Assembly (NCBI GenBank): GCA_001179505.1
Contig: CDMY01000429.1
Location: 1 to 64,000 of the forward strand
DNA length: 64,000 nt
Direction of reading: 5' to 3'
DNA from: Vitrella brassicaformis CCMP3155
Taxonomy: Eukaryota > Protista > Chromerida
A program made the translations under genes and the position numbers. The notes beneath the pieces are model-generated. The model made no database searches and was not told where the DNA came from. It saw nothing but the letters and a program-made list of their open reading frames with translations. Positions 2,148 to 45,535 of this stretch are shown here, piece by piece. The first letter of the stretch is position 1; every line of letters begins with the position of its first letter.

Positions 2148-3816
2148 ATGTCCTTGCTGTCGTGCTTGTTGGTGCTGTGCTGGGCCCTTGCCGTCTGCCA
2201 GCCCCTCCCTCGCACTTGGCGACCGATCGAGGGAGGGATAGACCAAGCCATGAGGTGGATCTCAGACGCATTAAGGCTGCAAGAGGGCAACAGGACCGAC
2301 AGACCAGGTGAGCCAGTGCAGCGGGAGAGGACGATGGACAACAGCGCATATTGTGCGGTCTGTTGCCTTCAGGCTCACCACCACCGACAAGTGACAACGA
2401 CCAGGCCCCCTGTCCAGGTGATTTGTGAGCAGGCAGCAAAAGCAAGGGCATCGTCGCAACGGACTTTGCTTTTCTTTCTTTCAGAGCCGCTTCTCCTTGA
2501 AGCAACCGAGCAATTGAAAACGGGAGACAACTGGCAATCTTCACTCAGGGTATGGGATGACGACATCAGTCCATTCGTTATTGTGGCACTTGACGCTGGG
2601 GAGAAAGGGACTGTCCAGCTCTACGTCCGAGATCAAACTGGCCCCGACTGGCCCCCTGGAGGTTTTTTATTCGAGTAAGTGGGGTGCATGATGGAAATGG
2701 TAAATAGCACGCTTCCTGGCAGTGATGCTTTCCCGGCTGTAGGAACATACTTCCTGCCGATGCTCCCTCTGATCACACGGCTGGGACGTACGAGTCAGTC
2801 GTTGTGGTCCTGACGGCAAATATCAAGGACGCCATTGACTTCCAGGTATCCTTAGATGAATCAATTGGAACAAGGGCCATTTAGCGCACACAATAACTCG
2901 CTAAGTGTTCTGTGGACTTTGCATTCTGTAGGTCGAGTGCGTGGATGGGCCTTGTGAATTTAAGCTGATTGCTTTTGAGCACACTGGCAATTGCGTACCA
3001 AGAGCAGTCGATGGAGAGGTACTTGGCGTGAACAAGACTATCGATCTGGAGACACTCCCGCTTTTCCCTCCTCCTCCAGCGCCCCCAGGAGGTCGTCTGC
3101 CAAGACCATGTCCAGGCAAGCGCAAGAAATGAAGAGCTGCGCACTATGATGTACGCCTACGTACCTGAGTGCTCATCAGGTCACCCTTCTGGTCCATTGA
3201 ATGGCTCGTTGGGAGAGGGCGGCTTCAACAGGCTCGACAATATTGCTGGTCTTTTCCCTGCTTCTGGTCCTTTTCCTGCCCGCTATTTCATCGTTGCTCT
3301 GGATTCACTCATTACGGGCAACAGTGACTTGGAGGTGTTCGAGATCGATTCTGACGGATCAACAGGGTAAGGAAGCGGAACTCCTCATGAAATGGACTGA
3401 ATGGTGCGTTCATGCAGGCTCATCACAGCGACCGAGGTCGTGAGTGATGATACGATAGACAGATATGAAGATGTAGTTGTTGTTGATGCAAGTGCTTTTA
3501 ATCGCACTTTTTCTGCTGCAGTAACTAAGCCATGGCTTCAGTGCTCGCATTCAATGCTGTGCGTGGTCTTTTTGTTCAGGTGAAATGTATCACGGGTCCA
3601 TGTGAATGGGTGCGCATCCAATGCCAACAAGCTGAACACATTCTTCTTACTCTCCGTTGTTTGTTTGACTTGCTTTTGCAGCAACTCATCACTTTCTATC
3701 ATACTGGCAATTGCACGCCAACGCTGCCTCACGGCGTGATAGTGCCTGGAGTCAATACACAGATTGCCTTTGACCAACCTTTTCTCTCCCCTATATATAT
3801 TTTTCCGCCTTCCTGA
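2148..3816 (+). CDS. Secreted protein with two homologous modules of unknown family, multi-exon
   Basis: Leader MSLLSCLLVLCWALAVCQ. The GT/GC-AG exon chain is phase-consistent through to the TGA ending at 3816. Repeated motifs: FVIVALD/YFIVALD, YESVVVV/YEDVVVV, GPCEF..HTGNCVP/GPCEW..HTGNCTP. Confidence 0.65.
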
Positions 3817-4335
3817 CAGAGAAGTCATTTGCCATTGTCGCAGCTCTTTTTCCCCCACTCATTTGCGTGCATGACATTCTTGGCATAGTAAGTGGTCACA
3901 TAATGCTGATTCGCTGTATTTCTGACGCTAGACAGAAGCGACGTTTCATGTAATGAATCCTTACGACTGATACAGTACGTATCAGCATGCAAGACTCACC
4001 AGTGTTCGTGCTTGCTGTAAAATCATTCCTGAAAAATACTGACACGGACTCGTACAAAGGCACACAGGTGCATCAATGGCACCTTTCATGTGAACTCAGT
4101 CAACTCAAAAAGGAAAGCCGTCACTTCATTCTCAAAATTGTAAGCGACATCTTATGCCAGAAGCCTACAAGACACGCCACACTTCACTACCCAAGCAAGA
4201 CTCATCAGTCTTGATGCAAGCAACATTACACACACAACAACTGACACACACAAACGGGGCTGATCTGCTGACACACCAACTTTTCTTCACTCAAGTCCCT
4301 CCATCCAAGAGAGACACCATCCCGCTGTTTTTTTA

Positions 4336-7300
4336 TCAAGTCAGTGAATCAGCGTACGAAGAAGGCAAAAAGGAATCTCGCCGTCGCCTCCTTCCACTTA
4401 ATTGCCAGCTGCCTCCTTTGAGCTTTCGTCGGTCCCTTAATCTGCTGAGTCGCCTTACGTGTCGCATCGCTGCCGCATTGCCGGCTGCATCGGCAGAAGG
4501 GGAAAGTACAGACGAGCCGCCCTTGGACGTGTCGTTGATGGCGAGGCTTGATGGCCGTGGCGCCCTCTCCGGCAGCACTGATATGCATTCACGCACGCAG
4601 AAGAGACCAATCGCATTTTCATCTAATGTCTCCTCATGTGTCCCCCCCTTACTGCAATCAATGGCCACAGGGCAGAGGGCCTCCACTTTCGCCTTCTCTC
4701 CATCTGATCTCGCGAATTCCGCACTCAATGGCACAGTGCGAATCAGGTAGTGCTGAGTCGGCTGATAGAGATGGAAGTCATAAACGATCCCTATGATGCC
4801 CGTGTTCGACAGCTTGACAATCTCTCCTGCTTCGCTAGTGTTGCACGACAAAGTGAACATGGGAGGGGCGGTGAGGCTGCCGATGTTCACAGGGCCAGCG
4901 CCTGATGACACCACGGTCGCAATGGAATGGACAAGGTCGTCATCAACAGCCAGGGGGTCCCCATCTGCCATGAGCTGCAGCCGCTTGGAGCGTTGGCATT
5001 GGATCATCACTAAAGCATCCACACGCACACACATACACACAAGCAGGCAGGGTGACAACGAGACATGATATTCCTGGCATGCTCACCTTCATTGGTCTTG
5101 TTGCAGAAGCTAGCCAGACGTCCCAACAGTACAGCTGCATCCTGGATGAAGTTGCTGTTTACAGTCCTTGTACCAATTTGAGACAGCAACCTCAGTCCCA
5201 ACTGATCATCACTCAATTGTGGAGCGCCAGCATCACGTCCGGGAGAGAATCGATATGCCTGAAGACAGGCCAACACACGAAAGAGAAAGAGCACGAGTAT
5301 CGAGGGCACGCCATTTTGCAATCGGAACAACGGAACGCATCATTTACCCCATCAAAAGCCCTATCAGCAAGGTAAACGTCAAATAAAGCGAAATAAGCGT
5401 CTTCATCCGAACCTTCCGGAGCGGATACAATGTCCTTTGTCGATATCGTCGTTGAGAGATTTGCGTTGAAACATCTCTCGACCGTGGCATTTCCATGTTC
5501 AGCAAGACTCAGTAAAGTATACTCGATATCCATCAGTCTCACGCTCGAAGTGAGCAACGCCTCAGGAATGCCCAGCTGGAGACCTTCTGCGTTGTCCAAG
5601 CCGAAGAGCTTCGTGTTGACTTCATCCCCAAAACCGCCCCCTTGGAAGCTGTTCTGAAAGCCGACCGCCACTAGAAGAGTGCCTGTATCATTAAACGGAT
5701 ACCAGCAAGCCACTCAGATCCGCCTAGAGACTACTGCTTAGTTACCTTCGACGAAGACAATACTGCCTGCAGACGCACCAGAGAAAAGGACAGAGCGAAA
5801 CGAGCTAGTGAAGTTTCTTTTCTGCTCATGTACCTGCGCATTCAGACGGCTCGGTTTGGTACACAGCTCCTTTAATGACAACATTTGCCAACGTTGACGG
5901 CTTAAAGAAGCCCTTTGTAAGCGATCCATTGAGTGCTGCTGGCTCATACTCAACCTTCAGTTGCACGCCAGTGCCCCTCGCCTGGTCGGGCTCACAGCTG
6001 TAGATCCTCTCATCGACGACAACCGTGCAGGTGGAGTCGTTATAGCCCTTTTTAATGCATCCCTCGCTTTCACGATACTCGAACATAGAGAGACATCCAA
6101 AAGAGTCTCGACGTGGGGCTGGCCGTTTGCCCCCTATGATAGTGTACAACGATTCCACGCTTATGAAATCGGCATCGAGGAGCTGGTAAGTCCCTGGCTG
6201 CACTGCCGTTGAGATGGCGACGGGCAGCCGTGGCTCGGGACACGCTGCGAAGCACTCAAAGCCAATCTTGCATGCCGTGTTGAGGATGACATCGTCGCTG
6301 GTCCGGTTGCCGTCGTCTTGCCTCTCGTAGACCAACACCGTCGCGTCGACTTGTCTCTGCTCAGTCTGATTAGCCCCCATGCAGTTGTGCTGTGAGAGAT
6401 TGGCAACAACGCCTTCATCTCTGAGTGACGTAGTGGACCCGTCTGTCTCTTCGATCAGCACATCGACAAAGACGGTGTCTCCGAGGGTACCGAACTCAGG
6501 ATCGACTCCAACAGCAGCGATCGATCCAGCCTCGAGGCCGCCAGGGAATACATAAGGCTTGCTGAAGCCAGCTGGGAGAGTCTGGAGCACAAGGCCTCGG
6601 CAATCGACATAAACTAACCATCAAGCAAAGACAATGTGACCACAGATGCATGGAACTAGAAAACGTGCTTTCCTTCTCTCACCGCCTGCCTCTTGGTCCA
6701 ACAAGTAGGTCAGTCGCCCCTTGAGGATGAGATCGAGAGAGCTGCCCGTCTCCAAGTTTTCCAATTTGAATGTCAGCGGCAGAACCGTCACATTCTCGGC
6801 ACACAAGATCTGGACAAAGCTGAGAGTGGGACCGGTTGTTTGTAACTTATCGAGTCGGTCTTTCCACAAGAAGATCTTCGACCGTGTATCATTGACGCCG
6901 AACTCGTCAGCGATCTCTCTGGGCTCAAATACCCTGATCACCGAGAAGCGTGCCACCGTCCGCGCGTTGAAGAGTGGAAAAGCGGGGCTTTGGCCTGTCT
7001 TGAACAGCGGAAACCACAGTGATGGCGCCTCAATGCCGACCAAAGCACGAGAAGGGTCCGCACCAATCGCCACTTGCTCAGCCACGAGCCGCTCCTGCTC
7101 TGCGGGAATTCGATCCTCAGCAGCCGCCACGCGACAGGCCCTGTTGAAATCTTCGGCAGACTTGCCAGAGCCCTCCTCAACTTCAAACACTTTCTGCATA
7201 CAACAGACAAAATCGGAAAGCGGACCAGAATCGTGCTGTCTCTCGCTTCTACGTGTTTACCTTTGAGACTACATTATCATTCTGATCGTAGCTAAATCCG

Positions 7301-9026
7301 GATGCAGTGGCCGCGATGACACCGCCTGCCGCCACGTCGCCCGATGTGATGGTGAAGATACGCTGGTTGAGCAAAGAGGGGCAGCCGGAAGGCACCGCGG
7401 TGGGGAAGGTGAGGAGCCCCAAGGGAGAGCTGGCGGCTGGACTGACCAGAGCAATACCCCGTGTGGTGATGAGCTCTGTCTCTTCTCCTTCGCCAAAGAG
7501 AGTGATGCGCTGCTCTCCTGTGTAGTTGGCAAAGCGAGCTCGAGCGGATATCGCCTCATCGACCAACCCAGTGCTGCACACAGAACAGAGACGCAGGCCA
7601 GAGAGCCACACAGTGAGTGTCACGCGTGCCTCTGGACGGATGGCATTCACCCTGTAAGCTCGATCTGCGCATCGAGGCCGATACACTCGGCTTCGCTGGC
7701 GTCGACCACCTTCAACACACCCTGAATGACAAGCTGATCGACGCACAGAAACCAGGCGAGCCATGATGCATTGTCACCCATCTCTTTCCTCCATCGATGC
7801 CTCCCACTTACTAGTGCCGGTGAGAACTCGTTGCCCTCTCGCACCGAGCAGAGACCGACGTGGGGACAATCAAATGACAGGATGGCAGACACTCCCTCTG
7901 TGGTGCTGCACGATAGGTCGATGAAGAAGTCCTCATGGGAGCCCCCCGCCCTTCCCTGAATGCGCATACAGCTGTCCGTGTCGCCCACATTTTCAATCTC
8001 TGTCGCCCAGGCCTCCGACTTGATGTCTTTGACCAGATAAGTGCCCGGCACGAGCTGTGAGAAGCTCTTCGGGTCGTTGTTGTGGTCGCCAATGGCCAGC
8101 GACGCGGGATCGACGCCACTCGTCTCGGCGATCTCGACGACCTCCAGAGCATTGTAGCAGTCGAGGTTGGGGGCGAAGGGATTGACTGAGTTGGTGCATG
8201 GGTCAAGAGAAGGCGGGGAGCACAGAGACGATGGCTGGCCTTGCAAGACGCCGCGGACCAACGATGGCGTGCCCTCGGGCTCACGACTGAGCGCACCGTA
8301 CAGACCTGCTTGAACAATAGCAGACAGACGATTGTGTATCATGGGCACAGCACTGGGCTCTTCGTGCCTGTTTCTTCGGCCAAGCAGAAGCAAAAGCGTC
8401 GGTCGCTGGAGCGTGCACAGATTGGCTTGTCGGGCGGGCACTGCGAAAGCGCCGCCGAGCCACTATGGCCATCCACAGCACCGCATAGAATACTCTGTCC
8501 ATTCGAAGAGGCGCTCACGGGAGCACCGAGGGTTCTGTTCTGTGCAACTTGCAGCCGTCTCGTGAGGTCGGCCTCTGCAAAGGAAAGGGACGGACACACA
8601 GAAGGCGACAGATGTTGGTGAATGGCTGAATGAAACGTTGCGTGATTCCCCCACCAGCCACACACTGCCCGAAAGCCCTCTCTTGGCCCTGGCCGTCTGT
8701 GAAGTATAGAAAGGGGTTCGGTTCACACGTGGACAGCCGCAGGCCAGCCGGCGGGACCTCTGCAATGACACGATGCAACAGCAGTATCAGTTTTCTACTC
8801 TGGGCTAGGGTAAGTGAGTCAGATCGCGAAACGTACCGGGAAGGCAGTCAGCCGCTGCTGTGGTGACGCCGTCTGCTGATCGGTTGTTGTTGAACACGCA
8901 GGCCGCCGTGAACTGCGCGTCGACGGCTAAGCGAACAGGCGGCCATGCGAGCAGAAATGCGAAGAGGGATCTGGTGAGTCGTGAGGAATGTCGGCTGGGA
9001 TGGACTCGGCATGACAGAGGATGCAT
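4336..9026 (-). CDS. Large predicted secreted protein, hypothetical, multi-exon (may be more than one gene)
   Basis: Chain of long same-strand ORFs (8805-9026, 8515-8778, 8339-8665, 7647-8441, 7249-7764, 6621-7199, 5826-6590, 5213-5713, 4336-5058) with protein-like, beta/Cys-rich composition. The 5' exon carries a hydrophobic segment (SLFAFLLAWPPVRLAVDA). No family recognised. Confidence 0.5.
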
Positions 9027-9107
9027 AGATACTCGCGACGGACTACAAATGACTGTAAGTTCTTCCCCAAAATAACTAGGCTTGCTCTCAGGGCGTGGCT
9101 TGCAGTG

Positions 9108-9638
9108 TCGTTAACGCCTCCCTTCTCTCATTGTGTGTGGACAGTGGCACGACTGCAGATTTGGACTTCTTTCGGCTTCTCCAGTCGTCCGATGAGCATA
9201 GGAGGCTTACAGTGTACGTGTGTCTGAGTGTCTGTCTGCATGTCTGTTTGCTTGTCAGGTGTGTTGGCAGAGGAGTTGAGGAGTGTGTTGCTCGAGGTGG
9301 TGTTCGAGAGCAGTGTGGACAGGGGGGACGACAAGGCGCTGTACGTCAACCTGCCGGCCATGCTCTACAAGACCATGCACGCCACGCAGCACGTGGCACG
9401 CAAGATGGAGGCGCACGACAGCCGGGCGGACGACGCACAGGCAGCCATAAGCGAGATCAGGCAGGAGCTAGCCGAGCTGACAAGGGATGTCAGAGAGATG
9501 AAGGCGCTGGTGAGTGCCGCTGTGGCCGATCGATATGAGCAGAGGGAGGGGCGGGCGGGAGGCGGCCAGGGGGATGTTGGGCCGCCTCTAGTCGATGCGC
9601 TTCAAGACTTGATTCCCCGCATGGGGAGGGACGACTAA
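9108..9638 (+). pseudogene. Internally deleted copy of the S74/ICA-domain gene at 11375-12578
   Basis: 9189-9828 is nearly identical to 12129-12768 (end of intron 3, last exon, 3' flank). 9108-9185 resembles the start region of the intact gene but has ACG in place of ATG (9149-9151). Most of exon 1 and exons 2-3, including the SDGRYK catalytic motif, are missing. Confidence 0.7.
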
Positions 9639-9828
9639 TTAGAACGAAATGTGACGTGATCTCATGCCTTTGTTGATAGAGACCGGTAGGTGCCTTCTAT
9701 TTGTTTGTGTGCGTGTGGCTGACCAGAGTGTTGAATCGACTGCTGTCTATGTTCTTCTTCTCGGTGAATCGCTCGTGTCACGTGGGCACACACACGGCGC
9801 ACACGGGCGGTCATCGATTCACAGACAG

Positions 9829-10128
9829 NNNNNNNNNNNNNNNNNNNNNNNNNNNNNNNNNNNNNNNNNNNNNNNNNNNNNNNNNNNNNNNNNNNNNNNN
9901 NNNNNNNNNNNNNNNNNNNNNNNNNNNNNNNNNNNNNNNNNNNNNNNNNNNNNNNNNNNNNNNNNNNNNNNNNNNNNNNNNNNNNNNNNNNNNNNNNNNN
10001 NNNNNNNNNNNNNNNNNNNNNNNNNNNNNNNNNNNNNNNNNNNNNNNNNNNNNNNNNNNNNNNNNNNNNNNNNNNNNNNNNNNNNNNNNNNNNNNNNNNN
10101 NNNNNNNNNNNNNNNNNNNNNNNNNNNN
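9829..10128. other. Assembly gap (300 N)
   Basis: N run followed by poly-G. Confidence 0.99.
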
Positions 10129-11374
10129 GGGGGGGGGGGGGGGGGGGGGGGGTGCGGGTGGACGGATCGACGAAATTAGTTGGCAGCGGTGAATGTGATT
10201 TGACTGCCGAGGCACGCAACGATCAGCGGGAAATGGCCATGGGCTCCATCTTCTGGGGAGAGGGGAGGGAGCGAGGGCCAGCCTTGCTTTGCCTTGGTTC
10301 TTCTTTTCCGGTGGATTGATGTGTTGTGTACGCGTGGAGACACACGGGCAGTCATCAACCGATCAAGGCTTTGGGGAAAAGAATGGCTGTTCTTTGTTTC
10401 ATTTTTCAGCCTTGACGCCGTACTGCCTTTGTTTCGTACGTACACATGATACGGATAACGGTACATGCGAGTGTCTCATCATGATGGCGACGCTCCTCTC
10501 GAGCTCATACAATGGGTGTTGAGGTGTCTAGACCACAAACAACAGTGAGGCTGGAGGTGGCAGTGGGACTGCTGATGTCTTCGCTTCAGCTTTGGGCTCA
10601 CTGTCATGAATGCACTTCATGTGTGTGTCACTTCCCGTCGTCATTCATATTGCGGATCTGTCGGTCAGACGTGACAGCGAGAGACGTTGCATATGTGTGT
10701 GAGCGTGACATGACCAGACTCAAATACTTGTACACCGAGAGCAGCTGACATAGAGGCGCGGGGCTTCGTACTGTGCCGATCGGTCAATACTGACGTAAAC
10801 CATGGCTAATGTCTTGACGGAAAAATGTGACGACGTTGCATTCGTCAGTACATGCACAGGCGTCTGTGGGAGACTGGTGACATGGACAGTTGCTAGTCGG
10901 TGGCCGGCGACGTCAGTCAGTCAGACTGAGTGCACATTGTTCGTGAGCGCACACTGTGCGGGGTGCTAATCACACACTCACCAACGCCGTCACGCGGCCT
11001 ATTTGGTCACTGAAGCACATAAACGTGAACGACACATCCATCAAGTAAGCCAGTTTCAACACATAAATGAATGGACACTCGTGCCTCTCTGCTAAGCCGG
11101 TGTGTGGGTGTGCCTGCCAGGTGCTGCTGCACACGCTCATCCAGCCACGCTGTATGAGTATGTTGGTTGTTTCCCCGCCGGCCTGCAATGAGAAAAACCT
11201 CCTCGCAGCGATCGGCCAATGCGAGCTTAGACAAGGGCTGTCAACGTCAAGGGCTGTAGTTGAAGGGCTGCGAGAATGCGAAGAGGGATGGAGTGACGCA
11301 GGTTGGGTGAAAGAGCCTCACCGTGTCATGTTACATCAACGTTAACGGCTGCCCTCTTCTACACTGTGAGCGAC

Positions 11375-12578
11375 ATGACTGCAGTATCAGATGTATTTCG
11401 GCTTGTCGCCCTCATCGCGTCGCTCTGTCGGGCGCGTAGAGCAGCGGCGCAACCACATCTTTTCCCTCATCCACCGGACAGCGGAGCAATCGATGACCTC
11501 TCGAAGCCCGATGGCGGCAATGTGCTCACAGCCACAGCCAAGGGGCTCATCGGCACGCCCGCCGTCAACAACAAAACAGGAGCCTCACTCTTCCAATACG
11601 CCACCTTCCAGTGCGGTCCGCCAACAACAATCCTCTGTGCATGGCGTATGATTGCCTTGCGCTTATGTCCGTGTTTGTCGCCTCACGTGTGTCCAGGCAA
11701 GGACCCAACTCTCGGGGCTGCCGACCTGGAAGCTGACAGGGCGCTCCTGCAGGGATTCGGTGAGGACACCGCACCTGCACCTGCCTGCACCGAACACACA
11801 CAGAGGCTGAAGGACACACACATGGAATGGCTGGTTGCGTGTGCAGGCATGTTGGGGTGTGGGACTGATTTCCCTCTGTACGAGGTATACGCCGGGGCCC
11901 TCTTCAGTCAGTACTATGGTGCGCTGAGCGACGGCAGGTACAAGACACACGTCATCAAAATGGCCTCTATGAGCGGACGGGAGGCGTTCGAAGCCATCAA
12001 GAGGATAGACTTCTACAGCTTCCAATGGAAAAGGGACCGCAAACGACACCGTGCTAATGGGGATGAGACGCACAGGGACAGAGCCCCTTACGCGGACCAA
12101 TGGCAATTCGGTCGGTGGTGTTTCTCGCCCGATGAGCATAGGAGGCTTACAGTGTACGTGTGTCTGGGTGTCTGTCTGCATGTCTGTATGCTTGTCAGGT
12201 GTGTTGGCAGAGGAGTTGAGGAGCGTGTTGCCCGAGGTGGTGTTCGAGAGCAGTGTGGACAGGGGGGACGACAAGGCGCTGTACGTCAACCTGCCGGCCA
12301 TGCTCTACAAGACCATGCACGCCACGCAGCACATGGCACACGAGATGGAGGCGCACGACAGCCGGGCGGACGACGCACAGGCAGCCATAAGCGAGATCAG
12401 GCAGGAGCTAGCCGAGCTGACAAGGGATGTCAGAGAGATGAAGGCGCTGGTGAGTGCCGCTGTGGCCGATCGATATGAGCAGAGGGAGGGGCGGGCGGGA
12501 GGCGGCCAGGGGGATGTTGGGCCGCCTCTAGTCGATGCGCTTCAAGACTTGATTCCCCGCATGGGGAGGGACGACTGA
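11375..12578 (+). CDS. Secreted protein with C-terminal intramolecular chaperone auto-processing domain (peptidase S74/ICA, phage tail-fibre type) and coiled coil
   Basis: Four phase-consistent exons 11375-11615, 11697-11759, 11847-12110, 12199-12578 (315 aa). Leader MTAVSDVFRLVALIASLCRARRAAAQ. ICA signature SDGRYKTHV..AFEAIKRIDFYSFQWK..FGVLAEELRSVLPEVV..ALYVNLPAML, then a heptad coil (AISEIRQELAELTRDVREMKALV). Recognised by motif only. Confidence 0.85.
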
Positions 12579-14049
12579 TTAGAACGAAATGTGACGTGAT
12601 CTCATGCCTTTGTTGATAGAGACCGGTAGGTGCCTTCTATTTGTTTGTGTGCGTGTGGCTGACCAGAGTGTTGAATCGACTGCTGTCTATGTTCTTCTTC
12701 TCGGTGAATCGCTCGTGTCACGTGGGCACACACACGGCGCACACGGGCGGTCATCGATTCACAGACAGACAGCCAGCCGGCCTGTCCGTCGATCGAAGCA
12801 GTCGATGGAACCGAAGCGAAGTGAGCGAGAGAGAGGCAGTGGGTGTGCTGTGTGTCATATTTCGAATTCCTTCCTTGCTGCCGTTTGTTTTGTCCATGCG
12901 GTACGTATGACTGTCGTGGGTAATTAAGTGGTTCGGCAGTTGTGTGCACACACTGACACGTGCAGACAGTCAGTCAGAATACACATGTACTGTATACGTA
13001 TGTGTGTATGTCACGTCGATCGTTGGTATACAGAGGCGCGGCTGACGTCTGTACTCTTCTGTGTGTGGCGGGTGACATGGACACTTAACAATCGGTGGCC
13101 GCGACGTCAGTCAGTCCACTTGTTTACACACGTCGACGTCGGCACGTACCATCGACACAAAAGTGCTAATTAGCACACATACACATAGGTCTTCGATATC
13201 ACGGCGTACTCACTGAAGCCCACAAAGGTCAACGACACATCATCAGGTAAGCGAGGCCCAGGCAGCTTCAACACACACGAATGCACACCTGCACGCGACG
13301 TACCGACATGACAGCCACATGGGATTACTGCCATCATGCAGAGCACACAGCGCACGTGGCTGTTAGGCCAGTGCCCACCGAGGATGGTCATGTATGTGAA
13401 TGAGTGCATCAGGTGCGGCCCTCGGGCTGCGTCGACTCGATAATGACATCGCCTCCGTAGGCCTGACCACACAGACACAGACAGCCACGCCTTTCAGCCG
13501 TTACACACTGCCCCTTGTGTGTCTCTCTTTGTATGTCAGCCCACCTCTGTGGGCAGCGGTCTGTTCAGGACGTGCTCGTTGACTTCACGTGTCAGCTCAG
13601 CCATCTCTGTAAGTGAAGCCACGCACAGAGGGACACGATGCCCACACTAGTGGATGGATGGATGTCATGTGTGTGTGGCCTCTCTCTCTCCCCCTCACTG
13701 ACTGTCTTCCTTCGTCAGGGCAAACAGCAGACTTTCCTCGAGGGAATCCCCGCCGACCGACAACACACGCATCCGGGGGCGCAAGTCGACTGCACACACA
13801 CAAATAAATGGACGCCATGACACACAGTGACGGTCTGTCTTCCTCACTTTGTGTCGTCTGTGGGGCCGTCGGCTGTCCGATTATGTGTTGGTTGTGCACA
13901 GCTGCCGTGATCGGAGCCCTGGTGGCTGCACATCGTATCAGGATCGGTCGCTGTGTGTCTCAGTGTCTCTGTGTGTGCGTCGGGTGTGTACTGTCGTGTG
14001 TGTCGAATGCACATGGCGGGCGGGGCAATGGGCCGGCGGGCGGCACCAT

Positions 14050-14349
14050 NNNNNNNNNNNNNNNNNNNNNNNNNNNNNNNNNNNNNNNNNNNNNNNNNNN
14101 NNNNNNNNNNNNNNNNNNNNNNNNNNNNNNNNNNNNNNNNNNNNNNNNNNNNNNNNNNNNNNNNNNNNNNNNNNNNNNNNNNNNNNNNNNNNNNNNNNNN
14201 NNNNNNNNNNNNNNNNNNNNNNNNNNNNNNNNNNNNNNNNNNNNNNNNNNNNNNNNNNNNNNNNNNNNNNNNNNNNNNNNNNNNNNNNNNNNNNNNNNNN
14301 NNNNNNNNNNNNNNNNNNNNNNNNNNNNNNNNNNNNNNNNNNNNNNNNN
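14050..14349. other. Assembly gap (300 N)
   Basis: N run. Confidence 0.99.
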
Positions 14350-15761
14350 TGTCATATTTCGAATTCCTTCCTTGCTGCCGTTTGTTTTGTCCATGCGGTA
14401 CGTATGACTGTCGTTGGTAATTAAGTGATTCGGCAGTTGTGTGCACACACTGACACGTGCAGACAGTCAGTCAGAATACACATGTACTGTATACGTATGT
14501 GTGTATGTCATGTCGATCGTTGGTATACAGAGGCGCGGCTGACGCCTGTATTTAACAGTGTGTGTGGCTGGTGACATGGACACTTAACAATCGGTGGCCG
14601 CGACGTCAGTCAGTCCACTTGTTCACACACGTCGACGTCGGCACGTACCATCGACACAAAAGTGCTAATTAGCACACATACACATAGGTCTTCGATATCA
14701 CGGCGTACTCACTGAAGCCCACAAAGGTCAACGACACATCCATCAGGTAAGCGAGGCCCAGGCAGCTTCAACACACGAATGCACACCTGCACGCGACGTA
14801 CCGACATGACAGCCACATGGGATTACTGCCATCATGCAGAGCACACAGCGCACGTGGCTGTTGGGCCAGTGCCCACCGAAGATGGTCATGTATGTGAATG
14901 AGTGCATCAGGTGCGGCCCTCGGGCCGCGTCGACTCGATAATGACATCACCTCCGTAGGCCTGACCACACAGACACAGACAGCCACGCCTTTCACCCGTT
15001 ACACACTGCCACTTGTGTGTCTCTCTCTGTGTGTGTCAGCCTACCTCTGTGGGCAGCGGTCTGTTCAGGACGTGCTCGTTGACTTCTCGTGTCAGCTCAG
15101 CCATCTCTGTAAGTGAAGCCACACACACAGAGAGACATAATGCCAACACTAGTGGATGGATGGATGTCATGTGTGTGTGGCCTCTCTCTCTCCCCCTCAC
15201 TGACTGTCTTCCTTCGTCAGGGCAAACAGCAGACTTTCCTCGAGGGAATCCCCGCCGACCGACAACACACGCATCCGGGGGCGCAAGTCGACTGCACCCG
15301 CATAATGAGGCCATGACACACAGTGACGGTCTGTCTCCCTCACTTTGTGTCGTCTGTGGGGCCGTCGGCTGTCCGATCGTTTGCTGGTGGTACACAGCTG
15401 CCGTGATCGGAGCCCTGGTGGCTGCACATCGTATCAGGATCGGTCGCTGTGTGTCTCAGTGTCTCTGTGTGTGCGTCGGGTGTGTACTGTCGTGTGTGTC
15501 GAATGCACATGGCGGGCGGGGCAATGGGCCGGCGGGCGGCACCATCATCACACCAGGACCTAAGGGAGACACACACACACGAGCCCAGTGGACACAGCAG
15601 CACGACTCCCTCCCGACTCATTCACGCATACCATTCTGCATGACGGGAGGTCCATACGGCATCATCGTGGGGGCAGACGCCTCGTGGTGCGGCCAATACC
15701 CCACTGGGGCGCCTGCAGCACACGGACAGAAGACAGAGGGGACATCATGCAGTTAGTTGCA

Positions 15762-16061
15762 NNNNNNNNNNNNNNNNNNNNNNNNNNNNNNNNNNNNNNN
15801 NNNNNNNNNNNNNNNNNNNNNNNNNNNNNNNNNNNNNNNNNNNNNNNNNNNNNNNNNNNNNNNNNNNNNNNNNNNNNNNNNNNNNNNNNNNNNNNNNNNN
15901 NNNNNNNNNNNNNNNNNNNNNNNNNNNNNNNNNNNNNNNNNNNNNNNNNNNNNNNNNNNNNNNNNNNNNNNNNNNNNNNNNNNNNNNNNNNNNNNNNNNN
16001 NNNNNNNNNNNNNNNNNNNNNNNNNNNNNNNNNNNNNNNNNNNNNNNNNNNNNNNNNNNNN
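15762..16061. other. Assembly gap (300 N)
   Basis: N run. Confidence 0.99.
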
Positions 16062-17480
16062 CAGCCACGCCTTTCACCCGTTACACACTGCCACTTGTGT
16101 GTCTCTCTCTGTGTGTGTCAGCCTACCTCTGTGGGCAGCGGTCTGTTCAGGACGTGCTCGTTGACTTCTCGTGTCAGCTCAGCCATCTCTGTAAGTGAAG
16201 CCACACACACAGAGAGACATAATGCCAACACTAGTGGATGGATGGATGTCATGTGTGTGTGGCCTCTCTCTCTCCCCCTCACTGACTGTCTTCCTTCGTC
16301 AGGGCAAACAGCAGACTTTCCTCGAGGGAATCCCCGCCGACCGACAACACACGCATCCGGGGGCGCAAGTCGACTGCACACACACAAATAAATGGACGCC
16401 ATGACACACAGTGACGGTCTGTCTTCCTCACTTTGTGTCGTCTGTGGGGCCGTCGGCTGTCCGATTATGTGTTGGTTGTGCACAGCTGCCGTGATCGGAG
16501 CCCTGGTGGCTGCACATCGTATCAGGATCGGTCGCTGTGTGTCTCAGTGTCTCTGTGTGTGCGTCGGGTGTGTACTGTCGTGTGTGTCGAATGCACATGG
16601 CGGGCGGGGCAATGGGCCGGCGGGCGGCACCATCATCACACCAGGACCTAAGGGAGACACACACACACGAGCCCAGTGGACACAGCAGCACGACTCCCTC
16701 CCGACTCATTCACGCATACCATTCTGCATGCCGGGAGGTCCATACGGCATCATCGTGGGGGCAGACGCCTCGTGGTGCGGCCAATACCCCACTGGGGCGC
16801 CTGCAGCACACAGACAGACGACAGAGGGGGCATCATGCACTTAGTTGCATTGTGTGCCGCTCACCGTGTGGAGTGAATTTCATTTCGGTGTCGGTGTCGG
16901 ACTCGTGACGCGACAGAAAGCACCCGCAGCACGTCTGAACAAATGCGACCCACACAGTGAAGTCACGCACAGTGCATCCCCCATGGCTGGCTACTCAGCT
17001 GACCTTTTCAGAGGGCCTGACGGGGTTGCTTTGTTTGGCGCCCATTGCAGTACGGGAGACGCTCACTCAGTGCACAGTGAAGACCGACAGGCGACTCAAG
17101 GGGGTCACCGGATGGAGCAAAGGATGGAAGGCTCTCAAGTTGAGTCGAACGGGGGAAGAAAGGCAAAATGGGAAGGAGAGGGGGGTGTCCACAGTCGTTG
17201 CACTGCGGAGCGGGAGGGTCGCACAGACCCCACACGACGACAGCGCTCTGCGGCGCTGCAAAGGCGGGAGAACGATGCGAAGAAAGAGAGAGGGAAACGA
17301 TGCGATGGAATGCGATGCGAGTCGGGCGGACCCGGGATGACGGTGCTGCTGCACTCGACGGTCAGTCTTTTTTTGCAAACACGCTGGACGATGCCTCGAT
17401 AATCACAAATCGCTGGGAACTGCGCGAGCTTGTTGCGGGGGCGCCCCCAGGTGTGTGAACCTCTGTGTCTTCCCGTGAGA

Positions 17481-33460: not shown

Positions 33461-33760
33461 NNNNNNNNNNNNNNNNNNNNNNNNNNNNNNNNNNNNNNNN
33501 NNNNNNNNNNNNNNNNNNNNNNNNNNNNNNNNNNNNNNNNNNNNNNNNNNNNNNNNNNNNNNNNNNNNNNNNNNNNNNNNNNNNNNNNNNNNNNNNNNNN
33601 NNNNNNNNNNNNNNNNNNNNNNNNNNNNNNNNNNNNNNNNNNNNNNNNNNNNNNNNNNNNNNNNNNNNNNNNNNNNNNNNNNNNNNNNNNNNNNNNNNNN
33701 NNNNNNNNNNNNNNNNNNNNNNNNNNNNNNNNNNNNNNNNNNNNNNNNNNNNNNNNNNNN
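33461..33760. other. Assembly gap (300 N)
   Basis: N run flanked by poly-G. Confidence 0.99.
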
Positions 33761-43917: not shown

Positions 43918-45535
43918 AATGAAATTTGGGGGGCGACGGGAGTGATAGGTAACTATAGGTGCATCAGGACCGCATGATGCCCGCTGTCACATGAGACGCG
44001 TGCGGCCCCCAGTCTCCTTCAGGCTGTCGAGAAAATCGTGATTCGATCCAAAGGCGAGACCCGCCTCGCCAGATAAGCATCGGGCAAGGACCGCGTCTAC
44101 ACCACACTGTCAGCGCCATCGCCCTCGTCAATTTAAGCCCACTTTCAGCCCCGTCCGTGACCAGGAGCCAGATCTACGGGCACTTCTATCCTGGGCTGGG
44201 TGGGAGCCAGCTCTCCCCACGGTGCTGCCCGCATGTGAACCGCATTGATGAGAGCTACCATTCGTCCATACAACCCACCGCCCCACTCGGCCTGTGACGC
44301 CCTCCATCGGACACTCTCCATCGGACACAGATGGTGAGTTCCCTCCACTCACGTCACAGGATGAGTGCCCCGGCGGGGCACCCGACGAGATGGGTGGTGG
44401 GTGTTTCTCTACAGGGTGGCCGGCTATATTGACCATGCATGGCTGATGTGAGACATCCATGGCCGGCCACCTCGTGGCCAGTCAGGCCAGGATCACGGCC
44501 GTCNNNNNNNNNNNNNNNNNNNNNNNNNNNNNNNNNNNNNNNNNNNNNNNNNNNNNNNNNNNNNNNNNNNNNNNNNNNNNNNNNNNNNNNNNNNNNNNNN
44601 NNNNNNNNNNNNNNNNNNNNNNNNNNNNNNNNNNNNNNNNNNNNNNNNNNNNNNNNNNNNNNNNNNNNNNNNNNNNNNNNNNNNNNNNNNNNNNNNNNNN
44701 NNNNNNNNNNNNNNNNNNNNNNNNNNNNNNNNNNNNNNNNNNNNNNNNNNNNNNNNNNNNNNNNNNNNNNNNNNNNNNNNNNNNNNNNNNNNNNNNNNNN
44801 NNNGCGAAACCGCCGCCTCCTGACAGGGCAGTCCACCCAAACGAGTGTCCGGTGTGTGAATGAGTCGGCTCCGTGTTTCTCACCAACGTAGTCTTCTTCT
44901 TCATCCCAGTGAAGATCATGGATGTTAATTACGCAAGGGCGCGCTTTCTAATGAAATTTGGGGGGCGACGGGAGTGATAGGTAACTATAGGTGCATCAGG
45001 ACCGCATGATGCCCGCTGTCACATGAGACGCGTGCGGCCCCCAGTCTCCTTCAGGCTGTCGAGAAAATCGTGATTCGATCCAAAGGCGAGACCCGCCTCG
45101 CCAGATAAGCATCGGGCAAGGACCGCGTCTACACCACACTGTCAGCGCCATCGCCCTCGTCAATTTAAGCCCACTTTCAGCCCCGTCCGTGACCAGGAGC
45201 CAGATCTACGGGCACTTCTATCCTGGGCTGGGTGGGAGCCAGCTCTCCCCACGGTGCTGCCCGCATGTGAACCGCATTGATGAGAGCTACCATTCGTCCA
45301 TACAACCCACCGCCCCACTCGGCCTGTGACGCCCTCCATCGGACACTCTCCATCGGACACAGATGGTGAGTTCCCTCCACTCACGTCACAGGATGAGTGC
45401 CCCGGCGGGGCACCCGACGAGATGGGTGGTGGGTGTTTCTCTACAGGGTGGCCGGCTATATTGACCATGCATGGCTGATGTGAGACATCCATGGCCGGCC
45501 ACCTCGTGGCCAGTCAGGCCAGGATCACGGCCGTC
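43772..45535. repeat. Apparently identical 732-bp direct duplication across a gap (probable scaffolding artefact)
   Basis: 43772-44503 matches 44804-45535. The offset of 1032 equals 732 plus the 300-N placeholder. Confidence 0.85.
44504..44803. other. Assembly gap (300 N)
   Basis: N run. Confidence 0.99.

What the first reader, a model, noticed from the sequence alone, without database searches (positions are those of the whole stretch)
11375..12578. Spliced, secreted eukaryotic protein built on a phage tail-fibre autocleaving chaperone (S74/ICA)
Seen: four in-phase exons encode a signal peptide, an approximately 100-aa passenger ending in EVYAGALFSQYYGAL, then SDGRYK, FYSFQWK, G-V-L-A-E-E-L..V-L-P-E-V-V, ALYVNL and a coiled coil. 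Known: this is the intramolecular chaperone architecture of phage endosialidases and tail fibres. The Ser..Lys dyad at i,i+5 matches endoNF Ser911/Lys916 and human MYRF Ser578/Lys583. In the eukaryotic cases I know (MYRF, Dictyostelium MrfA) the domain releases an Ndt80-type transcription factor. Inference: here there is no DNA-binding domain, but there is a secretion leader, so this may be a domesticated virus- or phage-derived system that trimerises and self-cleaves to release a small extracellular trimeric fibre or adhesin. It has acquired three spliceosomal introns, one inside the ICA domain.
Basis: partly seen in the sequence, partly recalled or inferred. Interest (0 to 1): 0.85.

Follow-up and report, generated by a model that had tools for sequence, protein, structure and literature searches.

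The report
Secreted algal protein with phage-type self-cutting cap
A chromerid alga (Vitrella brassicaformis or a very close relative) carries a real, intron-containing nuclear gene for a small, probably secreted protein built on the trimerising, self-cleaving "chaperone" domain known from phage tail fibres and animal MYRF; it belongs to a small algal family that databases label automatically but nobody has studied.

Summary
Exons 11375-11615, 11697-11759, 11847-12110 and 12199-12578 (+) give a 315-aa protein. It has an N-terminal hydrophobic leader, a ~100-aa passenger ending ...YYGAL, then SDGRYK (Ser129/Lys134), FQW, GVLAEE, LPEVV, ALYVNL and a long helix.

- **Domain:** Pfam Peptidase_S74 is above threshold.
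- **Splice test:** a profile built only from prokaryotic relatives scores the spliced product at 76 bits as one domain, against 32-33 bits for either half or for read-through.
- **Paralogues:** a Vitrella paralogue (65% identical) has the same four-exon structure. A third, mucin-like paralogue shares the intron inside the domain. dN/dS is 0.36.
- **Fold:** the paralogue's model matches the MyRF and endoNF chaperone structures.

Secretion, trimerisation and self-cleavage are inferred, not shown. RNA support is thin and confused by near-identical copies. The gene lies between two assembly gaps, next to a 5'-truncated second copy. The nearest non-Vitrella relatives (about 30% identity) are bacterial or mobile-element "tail fiber domain" proteins, not MYRF or known eukaryotic viruses, so the origin is unresolved.

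This scan already met the same Vitrella family on other DNA. Verdict: a new variant of a known kind, of moderate interest.

The parts
11375..11615 (+). Exon 1 (241 nt, ends in phase 1). Met1, the hydrophobic leader (residues 1-25, 11375-11449; predicted cut AAA|QPH) and the start of the passenger with the sequon N66-K-T.
   Evidence: The length equals exon 1 of the paralogue gene in L001. Hydropathy and sequon.
11616..11696 (+). Intron 1 (81 nt, GTCCGC..CAG). An alternative in-frame donor at 11646 would add 10 residues.
   Evidence: The protein alignment to P0001 has no gap at FQC[G]KDP. Introns are about 45% identical between the paralogues, exons 74%. No RNA contig covers it.
11697..11759 (+). 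Exon 2 (63 nt), passenger ...KDPTLGAADLEADRALLQGF[G].
   Evidence: Same length and phase as exon 2 of the P0001 gene. The prokaryote-only profile match already starts here, at residue 84.
11760..11846 (+). Intron 2 (87 nt, GTGAGG..CAG).
   Evidence: An RNA-run contig (X1, exact match) begins at 11846, the exon 3 boundary.
11847..12110 (+). Exon 3: the pre-cleavage motif MLGCGTDFPLYEVYAGALFSQYYGAL, then the N-terminal three quarters of the S74 domain (SDGRYK...FYSFQWK...QF[G]).
   Evidence: Pfam PF13884 at 28.7 bits over residues 27-82 of this exon, that is 11927-12094. Alignment A1. X1 contig 11846-12082 with no mismatch.
11927..11944 (+). Catalytic motif S129-D-G-R132-Y-K134. The predicted scissile bond is Leu128|Ser129.
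   Evidence: S, D, R and K are at least 90% conserved across 36 rows. They align to the MyRF ICA motif A(S)DLRAK in 7dc3. The dyad's role is described in PMC3742443 and PMC8326128.
12111..12198 (+). Intron 3 (88 nt, GTCGGT..CAG), inside the S74 domain, phase 1 in the Gly codon of F[G]VLAEE.
   Evidence: Same position and phase in the P0001 and P0003 genes. An RNA-run contig in X2 joins 12109 to 12198, GT..AG, skipping 88 nt. Its upstream part belongs to another paralogue. Splicing doubles the domain score.
12199..12578 (+). Exon 4: the rest of the S74 domain (GVLAEELRSVLPEVV, to about 12242), ALYVNL, a long predicted helix or coiled coil, a Gly-rich linker, a terminal helix and the stop codon TGA at 12576-12578.
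   Evidence: The P0001 model has helix 220-284 at pLDDT 84-97.
9185..9828 (+). 5'-truncated second copy: the tail of intron 3, exon 4 and the 3' UTR. It is 98.6% identical to 12125-12768 and ends at an assembly gap. It carries Pro to Leu at the near-invariant Pro of LPEVV.
   Evidence: Its upstream junction is present in contigs of four runs.
14350..14998 (+). Continuation of that second copy (96.9% identical to 12853-13500). It starts right after an assembly gap.
   Evidence: X1 contig 12495-13014 carries variants of both pieces, so they are contiguous in reality.

Best explanation
This is a functional nuclear gene of a chromerid alga (Vitrella brassicaformis or a very close relative). It encodes a 315-aa precursor of a lineage-specific family built on the S74/ICA (intramolecular chaperone, auto-processing) module. 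Proposed mechanism, with the status of each step: (1) the N-terminal leader takes the precursor into the ER (inferred). (2) Three chains associate through the C-terminal ICA domain and its long helix (inferred from the family). (3) The assembled ICA trimer helps the short upstream segment fold. That segment includes the conserved G-C-G-T-D-x-P-x-Y-E-x-Y-A-G motif, which is homologous to the G-I-G-T-x-x-P-x-Y-x-L-x-V-x-G motif before the cleavage site of bacterial and phage fibres (homology shown, role inferred). (4) The Ser129/Lys134 dyad, with Asp130 and Arg132 conserved, cuts Leu128|Ser129 (residues shown, reaction inferred). (5) This releases a ~10.7-kDa-per-chain acidic N-terminal piece with two conserved Cys and one sequon, plus a ~21-kDa ICA/coiled-coil piece, outside the cell or in the cell wall (inferred). 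Shown here: gene structure, domain identity, conservation of the catalytic motif, purifying selection and family membership.
For: - Pfam S74 is above its cut-off. The paralogue covers the model 1-57/58 at 41 bits.
- A prokaryote-only profile scores the spliced product at 76 bits as one contiguous domain.
- S129, D130, R132, K134, W162, G190, A193, P201 and V204 match near-invariant columns.
- The profile hits the MyRF ICA structure 7dc3 at E 5e-22, plus phage and Bdellovibrio fibre structures.
- The AlphaFold model of the 65%-identical paralogue has its best Foldseek PDB hits in MyRF ICA (7dc3), endoNF chaperone (3gw6), GA-1 (3gud) and T5 (4uw8).
- Exon lengths and phases match the annotated paralogue gene, and the intra-domain intron is shared with a 44%-identical paralogue.
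- dN/dS is 0.36 overall and 0.27 in S74. Exons are 74% identical and introns about 45%.
- An exact RNA-run contig covers exon 3, and a spliced junction contig exists for intron 3.
- Leader and extracellular hints: the cut site is conserved, P0003 has a canonical signal peptide and a Pro/Thr-rich stalk, there is no other hydrophobic segment, and the Cys pair and sequon are conserved.
- Neighbours at all three loci are ordinary host genes.
Against: - No cleavage, trimer or localisation data exist.
- The leader has no basic n-region and has RARR in its c-region, which is unusual for a signal peptide. No predictor was run.
- The passenger is only ~100 aa and its model is low-confidence (pLDDT 35-50), so 'fibre' may be the wrong picture.
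- The only spliced RNA contig over intron 3 continues upstream into a different paralogue, and exons 1-2 have no RNA coverage in the two small RNA runs.
- Structure prediction used the paralogue, not this exact protein.
- Local assembly is uncertain because of gaps on both sides.
Confidence: 0.6

Rival explanations
1. The S74 domain here serves only as a trimerisation and folding module and is not cut off. The mature product would be the full-length secreted trimer, with the coiled coil as a functional part.
For: The passenger is very short for a released fibre. The C-terminal helix and tail are long and under purifying selection (omega 0.32). According to an earlier, unchecked note of this scan, another Vitrella subfamily has lost the lysine, so non-cleaving use may exist in this alga. 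In MyRF the coiled coil, not the stalk, drives trimerisation (PMC8326128).
Against: Ser, Asp, Arg and Lys of the cleavage motif are all retained in the window gene, P0001 and P0003. That would not be expected if catalysis were dispensable.
Confidence: 0.17
2. The protein is not secreted. The N-terminal hydrophobic stretch would be a signal anchor or an organelle-targeting sequence, so the protein works inside the cell or tethered to a membrane, closer in logic to MYRF.
For: The leader is atypical: acidic n-region, Arg inside the h-region, RARR before the presumed cut, and a 10-aa Kyte-Doolittle hydropathy mean of only 2.16. Chromerids use signal-peptide-led bipartite leaders for plastid import (general knowledge).
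Against: The segment after the presumed cut is acidic and Pro-rich, unlike a transit peptide. Paralogue P0003 has a textbook signal peptide followed by a mucin-like Pro/Thr stalk. There is no second hydrophobic segment, and the Cys pair and N-X-T sequon are conserved.
Confidence: 0.13
3. The gene is part of an endogenous eukaryotic virus, for example a polinton-like virus or a giant-virus insert, and encodes that virus's fibre rather than a host protein.
For: S74-capped fibre proteins are reported as ubiquitous in polinton-like viruses integrated in protist genomes (PMC12220804). The gene family has several near-identical and decayed copies.
Against: Spliceosomal introns are conserved between paralogues at three separate loci, each flanked by host genes: mitochondrial carrier, ATP synthase c, glycosyl hydrolase 3, kelch, ankyrin and RING-CH. 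Ten neighbouring ORFs have no Pfam hit and no viral hallmark was seen. The best IMG/VR matches are only 25-38% identical over part of the domain. The gene is under purifying selection.
Confidence: 0.06
4. This copy is a non-functional duplicate or an assembly artefact, and only other family members are functional.
For: The gene sits between two 300-N gaps. A 5'-truncated copy, a mis-framed copy with Ser to Arg at the nucleophile (P0032) and further fragments exist. RNA depth on exon 3 is low (about 4).
Against: The reading frame is intact across four exons and all conserved residues are kept. dN/dS is 0.36 against the paralogue. DNA-like contigs of two runs match 10900-12158 without a mismatch, and an exact exon 3 contig occurs in an RNA run.
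Confidence: 0.04

Closest known systems
Vitrella brassicaformis CCMP3155 'Peptidase S74 domain-containing protein' paralogues: P0001 (309 aa, contig CDMY01000332.1) and P0003 (CEM12505.1 / A0A0G4FHP0, 431 aa)
   Same: P0001 is 65% identical over the full length. It has the same four exons with the same phases, the same leader, passenger, S74 and coiled-coil layout, and a paralogous upstream neighbourhood (~74% nt). P0003 shares the ~75-aa pre-cleavage module, the S74 domain and the intra-domain intron.
   Different: The window gene itself was not found among database proteins. P0003 carries a ~220-aa Pro/Thr/Asp-rich stalk and has a shorter C-terminal tail. These entries carry only automatic names. 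No paper on them was found.
Bacterial 'tail fiber domain-containing proteins' with C-terminal S74, including the Bdellovibrio fibre proteins solved as 8ond, 8ojn and 8oml
   Same: These are the nearest non-Vitrella sequences, 25-33% identical over ~170 aa. They share the G-I-G-T-x-x-P-x-Y-x-L-x-V-x-G motif immediately before S-D-x-R-x-K, then the S74 domain and a coiled coil. Some are cellular or mobile-element genes rather than phage genes.
   Different: They are prokaryotic and have no introns. Passengers are usually longer and repeat-built. The Vitrella motif has Cys in place of Ile and a eukaryotic leader.
Phage tailspike and tail-fibre intramolecular chaperone domains (endoNF 3gw6, GA-1 gp12 3gud, T5 pb1 4uw8)
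   Same: Same fold by Foldseek on the paralogue model and the same Ser/Lys dyad spacing (S911/K916 in endoNF; PMC8326128).
   Different: The passenger here is ~100 aa with no recognisable enzymatic or receptor-binding domain. This is a host nuclear gene, not a virion component.
MYRF / Dictyostelium MrfA ICA domain
   Same: This is the best solved-structure match of the family profile (7dc3, E 5e-22) and of the model. It is a eukaryotic, intron-containing context with a Ser-Lys dyad.
   Different: There is no Ndt80 DNA-binding domain and no transmembrane segment after the ICA domain. A leader sits at the N-terminus instead. P0001 alone gives no PDB sequence hit at E<=1 yet reaches bacterial proteins at E 1e-6 in a far larger library. 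The sequence is therefore closer to bacterial S74 than to MYRF.
S74-capped fibre proteins of polinton-like viruses in protist genomes (PMC12220804)
   Same: An S74 domain at the C-terminus of proteins encoded in protist nuclear DNA.
   Different: Those are large modular proteins (laminin-G, collagen and adenovirus-fibre domains) inside viral elements. This one is small, spliced, flanked by host genes and has no viral hallmarks nearby.

Membership tests
Peptidase_S74 / ICA (intramolecular chaperone auto-processing) domain | Sequence match to the family profile above the curated threshold | tested here: met
   PF13884 scores 28.7 bits on exon 3 alone (cut-off 22). The spliced paralogue scores 41.1 bits over model positions 1-57/58. 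A prokaryote-only profile gives 76.1 bits on the spliced window product.
Peptidase_S74 / ICA (intramolecular chaperone auto-processing) domain | Catalytic Ser and Lys five residues apart in S-D-x-R-x-K at the domain start | tested here: met
   S129-D-G-R-Y-K134. These columns are at least 90% conserved in 36 rows and align to the MyRF motif.
Peptidase_S74 / ICA (intramolecular chaperone auto-processing) domain | ICA fold followed by a long C-terminal helix that forms the trimeric coiled coil | tested here: met
   Tested on the 65%-identical paralogue P0001, not on the window protein itself. pLDDT is 77-97 over residues ~130-290 with helix 220-284. The top Foldseek PDB hits are 7dc3, 3gw6, 3gud and 4uw8. 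The trimeric state was not modelled.
Peptidase_S74 / ICA (intramolecular chaperone auto-processing) domain | Sits C-terminal to a trimeric, beta-rich passenger whose folding it assists | tested here: inconclusive
   The ~25 residues before Ser129 align to the conserved pre-cleavage motif of bacterial fibres. However, the passenger model is low-confidence and no known domain was found in residues 26-100.
Peptidase_S74 / ICA (intramolecular chaperone auto-processing) domain | Trimerisation-dependent self-cleavage that is abolished by Ser or Lys mutation | not testable with these tools
   Needs expression of the wild type and the S129A and K134A mutants.
MYRF / MrfA membrane-bound transcription factors | Ndt80-type DNA-binding domain N-terminal to the ICA domain | tested here: not met
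   No Pfam hit other than S74 in the N-terminal 245 aa or in P0001 and P0003.
MYRF / MrfA membrane-bound transcription factors | Transmembrane segment C-terminal to the ICA domain | tested here: not met
   The highest 19-aa hydropathy mean after residue 30 is 0.85.
Fibre protein of an integrated polinton-like or giant virus | Located inside a viral element with hallmark genes, typically intron-poor | tested here: not met
   Three conserved spliceosomal introns. Host-type neighbours at three loci. No Pfam hits in ten flanking ORFs. This last test is weak, because spliced genes are poorly covered by ORF scans.
Classical secretory protein | Cleavable N-terminal signal peptide | tested here: inconclusive
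   Heuristics only. The h-region VFRLVALIASLC has a hydropathy mean of 2.16. The A-x-A|Q/N-P site is conserved in three paralogues, and P0003 has a canonical leader. No SignalP or TargetP was available.

The most novel reading that the evidence does not exclude
Chromerid algae took up a bacterial or phage S74-capped fibre module independently of MYRF, gave it introns and a secretion leader, and expanded it into a family of self-processing trimeric cell-surface or extracellular proteins. That would amount to eukaryotic 'tail fibres', used for cell-wall building or for binding bacteria or the coral host. This small gene would be the minimal member. The truncated copy could supply a free chaperone/coiled-coil fragment.
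Probability: 0.3. Interest if true: 0.7.

Novelty: new variant of a known kind. Interest (0 to 1): 0.5.

Why it matters
The only experimentally studied eukaryotic use of the phage ICA/S74 self-cleaving domain that I know of is MYRF/MrfA, where it releases a transcription factor from the ER membrane. A secreted, intron-bearing, lineage-specific family with an intact catalytic dyad in a relative of apicomplexan parasites would be a second, mechanistically different co-option. It would also be a likely case of prokaryote- or phage-to-eukaryote transfer followed by domestication. At 315 aa with a ~100-aa passenger, the protein would be a compact natural system for studying chaperone-assisted trimer folding and auto-processing in the eukaryotic secretory pathway. 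It is not a new kind of domain or chemistry, and databases already attach the domain label to the paralogues.

Tried and rejected
- **Alternative donor for intron 1 (11646, 325 aa):** rejected. The paralogue's exon 1 is 241 nt, and the alignment is gap-free only with the donor at 11616.
- **Read-through ORF 11303-12478 (391 aa) as the product:** rejected. It scores 33.5 bits against 76.1 for the spliced form.
- **phmmer of P0001 against PDB sequences:** no hit at E<=1. Only the profile reached solved structures.
- **Rfam scan of the window:** nothing.
- **Pfam on ten flanking ORFs:** nothing.
- **Tandem repeats in 9000-16500:** none. The apparent low-GC, stop-free stretch at 14050-14349 is a run of N.
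- **IMG/VR scan:** the first alignment was too diverse. The narrower one found only 25-38% identical partial matches.
- **Eukaryotic relatives outside Vitrella:** an exhaustive phmmer over 1.84 billion representatives gave 43 hits. Thirty of them were looked up, and all except the Vitrella protein P0003 come from metagenomes or bacterial MAGs. The top 120 hits of the profile search are bacterial or unnamed.
- **Literature:** no paper linking Vitrella or chromerids with S74, endosialidase chaperone or tail-fibre terms.
- **My own error, corrected:** I first assumed P0003 shares intron 2. On checking, its first intron lies 8 residues upstream, so only the intra-domain intron is shared.
- I did not fold or search the exact spliced 315-aa window protein with the database tools, because it has no reference and I did not paste it. 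P0001 and the single exons stood in for it. No phylogeny with MYRF was made, because no MYRF sequence was available as a reference.
Full report
**What is in the sequence**

The window is eukaryotic nuclear DNA: 50-60% G+C, short GT..AG introns and 300-N assembly gaps.

From the ATG at 11375, four exons form one open frame of 315 codons ending at TGA 12576-12578. They are 11375-11615, 11697-11759, 11847-12110 and 12199-12578. The three introns are 81, 87 and 88 nt, all in phase 1.

A second possible donor for intron 1, at 11646, would give 325 aa. The annotated paralogue has an exon 1 of exactly 241 nt, and the protein alignment is gap-free there only with that donor.

**Is it more than chance?**

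Yes, on several independent counts.

- Pfam Peptidase_S74 (PF13884) matches exon 3 alone at 28.7 bits (gathering cut-off 22). The match begins exactly at Ser129.
- I built a profile from 32 prokaryotic or metagenomic relatives only, with no Vitrella rows, and scored alternative products:

| Product | Score (bits) |
|---|---|
| Spliced 315-aa protein, one contiguous domain (residues 84-272) | 76.1 |
| Read-through frame | 33.5 |
| Exon 3 alone | 32.4 |
| Exon 4 alone | 31.3 |

- The 12110/12199 splice therefore joins two halves of a single domain in register.
- In an alignment of 36 sequences, S129, D130, R132, K134, W162 and the Gly, Ala, Pro and Val of G-x-x-A...P-E-x-V are at least 90% conserved. 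The window protein keeps all of them.

**Relatives and gene structure**

The only close relatives in about 5.8 billion clustered proteins, and in an exhaustive phmmer over 1.84 billion representatives, are Vitrella brassicaformis CCMP3155 proteins plus short fragments. Both are automatically named "Peptidase S74 domain-containing protein".

- P0001 (309 aa) is 65% identical to the 315-aa model over its full length.
- P0003 (431 aa) is 44% identical to P0001.

The P0001 gene has exons of 241, 63, 258 and 368 nt with phases 1, 1, 1. The window gene has 241, 63, 264 and 380 nt with the same phases.

The P0003 gene shares the intron inside the S74 domain (F[G]VLA(D/E)E, phase 1) but not the other two. 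That intron therefore predates the split of the subfamilies.

Between the window gene and P0001, exons are 74% identical and introns about 45%. dN/dS is 0.36 overall and 0.27 in the S74 part. Both copies are under purifying selection.

The P0001 locus is a paralogous block. Its upstream genes also match the window, at ~74% nt identity.

Neighbours at the three loci are ordinary host genes: mitochondrial carrier, ATP synthase c, glycosyl hydrolase 3, kelch and alpha-amylase. In this window, earlier notes report ankyrin and RING-CH genes.

I infer that the window comes from Vitrella brassicaformis or a very close relative. I did not prove it independently.

**Fold**

The profile of the family reaches several solved structures:

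- the MyRF ICA domain (7dc3, E 5e-22), including the G-x-V-G-I-x-T-x-x-P motif before the cleavage site;
- a phage long-tail-fibre tip (6f45);
- Bdellovibrio fibre proteins (8ond, 8ojn, 8oml);
- the GA-1 chaperone (3gud).

An AlphaFold2 monomer model of P0001 is confident for the S74 domain and the long helix (pLDDT 77-97). It is poor for residues 26-123.

Its best Foldseek PDB matches are MyRF ICA, the endoNF intramolecular chaperone (3gw6), 3gud and T5 pb1 (4uw8).

**Secretion**

No predictor was available, so the evidence is circumstantial.

In favour:

- The leader MTAVSDVFRLVALIASLCRARRAAA|QPH has a 10-aa hydropathy mean of 2.16. No other hydrophobic segment exists; the maximum 19-aa mean after residue 30 is 0.85.
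- The A-x-A|Q/N-P site is conserved in all three paralogues.
- P0003 has a textbook signal peptide (MKFLRLVILAFLLVANVRA|QPP) followed by a ~220-aa Pro/Thr/Asp-rich, mucin-like stretch.
- Two Cys (80 and 106) and an N-X-T sequon (N66) are conserved.

Against: the n-region is acidic and the c-region is basic (RARR).

I rate secretion as likely, not shown.

**Expression**

Two small runs that behave as RNA have no coverage of the intergenic DNA or of exons 1-2. They hold:

- an exact 237-nt contig (X1) that begins at the exon 3 boundary (11846-12082, depth about 4);
- a contig in X2 that joins 12109 to 12198 (GT..AG, 88 nt skipped).

The second contig continues upstream into sequence that differs from the window, so it comes from a further paralogue with the same intron. 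The junction is therefore supported for the family. For this copy it is supported only over the 24 + 65 identical bases.

Two DNA-like runs match 10900-12158 without a mismatch.

- The gene lies on a 3.9-kb piece (10129-14049) between two 300-N gaps.
- A 644-bp copy of the intron 3 tail, exon 4 and the 3' UTR sits at 9185-9828 (98.6% identical) and ends at the first gap. A 650-bp copy of the 3' flank sits at 14350-14998 (96.9% identical) and starts after the second gap.
- One RNA-run contig carries variants of both pieces, so they form one contiguous, 5'-truncated second copy. It is either a real partial paralogue or an alternative haplotype around which the full-gene contig was scaffolded.
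- That copy has Leu in place of the near-invariant Pro of LPEVV. Its upstream junction appears in contigs of the RNA runs at higher depth than exon 3.
- Other decayed copies exist in public data. One is P0032, a mis-framed ORF with Arg at the nucleophile position. Another is P0004, a further exon 4 fragment.

**Origin**

Outside Vitrella, the best matches are 25-33% identical over ~170 aa and come from metagenomes.

- Where context could be read, the contigs are bacterial or plasmid-like. One carries GatB and DivIVA. Another carries a T4SS coupling protein, RepA and MobA.
- Named hits are bacterial MAG "tail fiber domain-containing" or VCBS proteins.
- None of the 30 hits looked up, apart from the Vitrella protein P0003, came from a eukaryotic reference set.
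- IMG/VR matches are no closer, at 25-38% over partial regions.
- P0001 alone does not detect MyRF at E<=1.

S74-capped fibres are common in polinton-like viruses of protists (PMC12220804). Nothing viral surrounds these loci, however, and the genes are spliced.

The data fit an old transfer from bacteria or phages followed by domestication. They do not exclude a viral intermediary or a shared origin with MYRF. No phylogeny with MYRF could be made here.

**Mechanism, committed**

I propose the following sequence:

1. ER entry by the leader.
2. Trimerisation through the ICA domain and its coiled coil.
3. Assisted folding of the short conserved upstream module.
4. Ser129/Lys134-catalysed cleavage of Leu128|Ser129.
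5. Release of a ~10.7-kDa-per-chain acidic N-terminal trimer (pI 4.5) and a ~21-kDa chaperone fragment.

Only gene structure, domain identity, motif conservation and selection are shown. Every biochemical step is inferred from the family. Overall confidence is 0.6.

The main rivals are a non-cleaving trimerisation role (0.17), a non-secretory location (0.13), a viral element (0.06) and a dead copy or artefact (0.04).

**Novelty**

The domain and its chemistry are known, and the paralogues already carry the automatic label.

This scan has already met and followed up the same Vitrella family on other DNA (17 notes). One of those notes, a 1446-letter mucin-like gene, matches the span of the P0003 gene. 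I treated these notes as leads only.

I found no paper describing host-encoded, secreted S74 proteins in chromerids or other alveolates.

I file this as a new variant of a known kind, with moderate interest (0.5).

Noticed in passing
window 9185-9828 and 14350-14998: A 5'-truncated second copy of the S74 gene: the intron 3 tail, exon 4, the 3' UTR and the flank, 97-98.6% identical. It is split by the scaffold around the full-gene contig. It carries Pro to Leu in LPEVV and TAA instead of TGA. An in-frame ATG at 9240 could give a ~132-aa ORF made of the chaperone C-half plus the coiled coil. RNA-run contigs cover its upstream junction.
   Followed up: partly
window 9829-10128, 14050-14349, 15762-16061, 33461-33760, 44504-44803: Five 300-N assembly gaps. 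The apparent low-GC bin at 14001-16000 and the stop-free ORFs in five frames at 13808-14448 are artefacts of the N runs.
   Followed up: yes
window 2962-8967 versus L001 3699-9518: The genes upstream of the S74 gene are also duplicated: 67-74% nt identity to the neighbourhood of the P0001 gene on CDMY01000332.1, including a 1306-aa protein with no Pfam domain. The S74 pair therefore arose by a segmental duplication of at least 6 kb.
   Followed up: partly
run X2, contig 5 (lies on window 12086-12109 and 12198-12262): An expressed further paralogue. Its exon 3 differs from the window (...GDERHTERP... instead of ...GDETHRDRAP...), but its junction region is identical. This suggests gene conversion among copies, or a chimeric contig.
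   Followed up: no
P0032 (71 aa) and P0004 (62 aa), public metagenome or assembly ORFs: Fragments of additional family copies. P0032 reads GALRDGRYK, with the nucleophile Ser replaced by Arg, and its upstream frame is shifted, so it is probably a decayed copy.
   Followed up: no
window 10863-10922, 13058-13116, 14559-14615; also 11007-11053 and 14709-14755: Short (47-60 nt) repeats, 83-87% identical, lie both upstream and downstream of the S74 gene. They may be remnants of a tandem duplication unit of about 2.2 kb.
   Followed up: no
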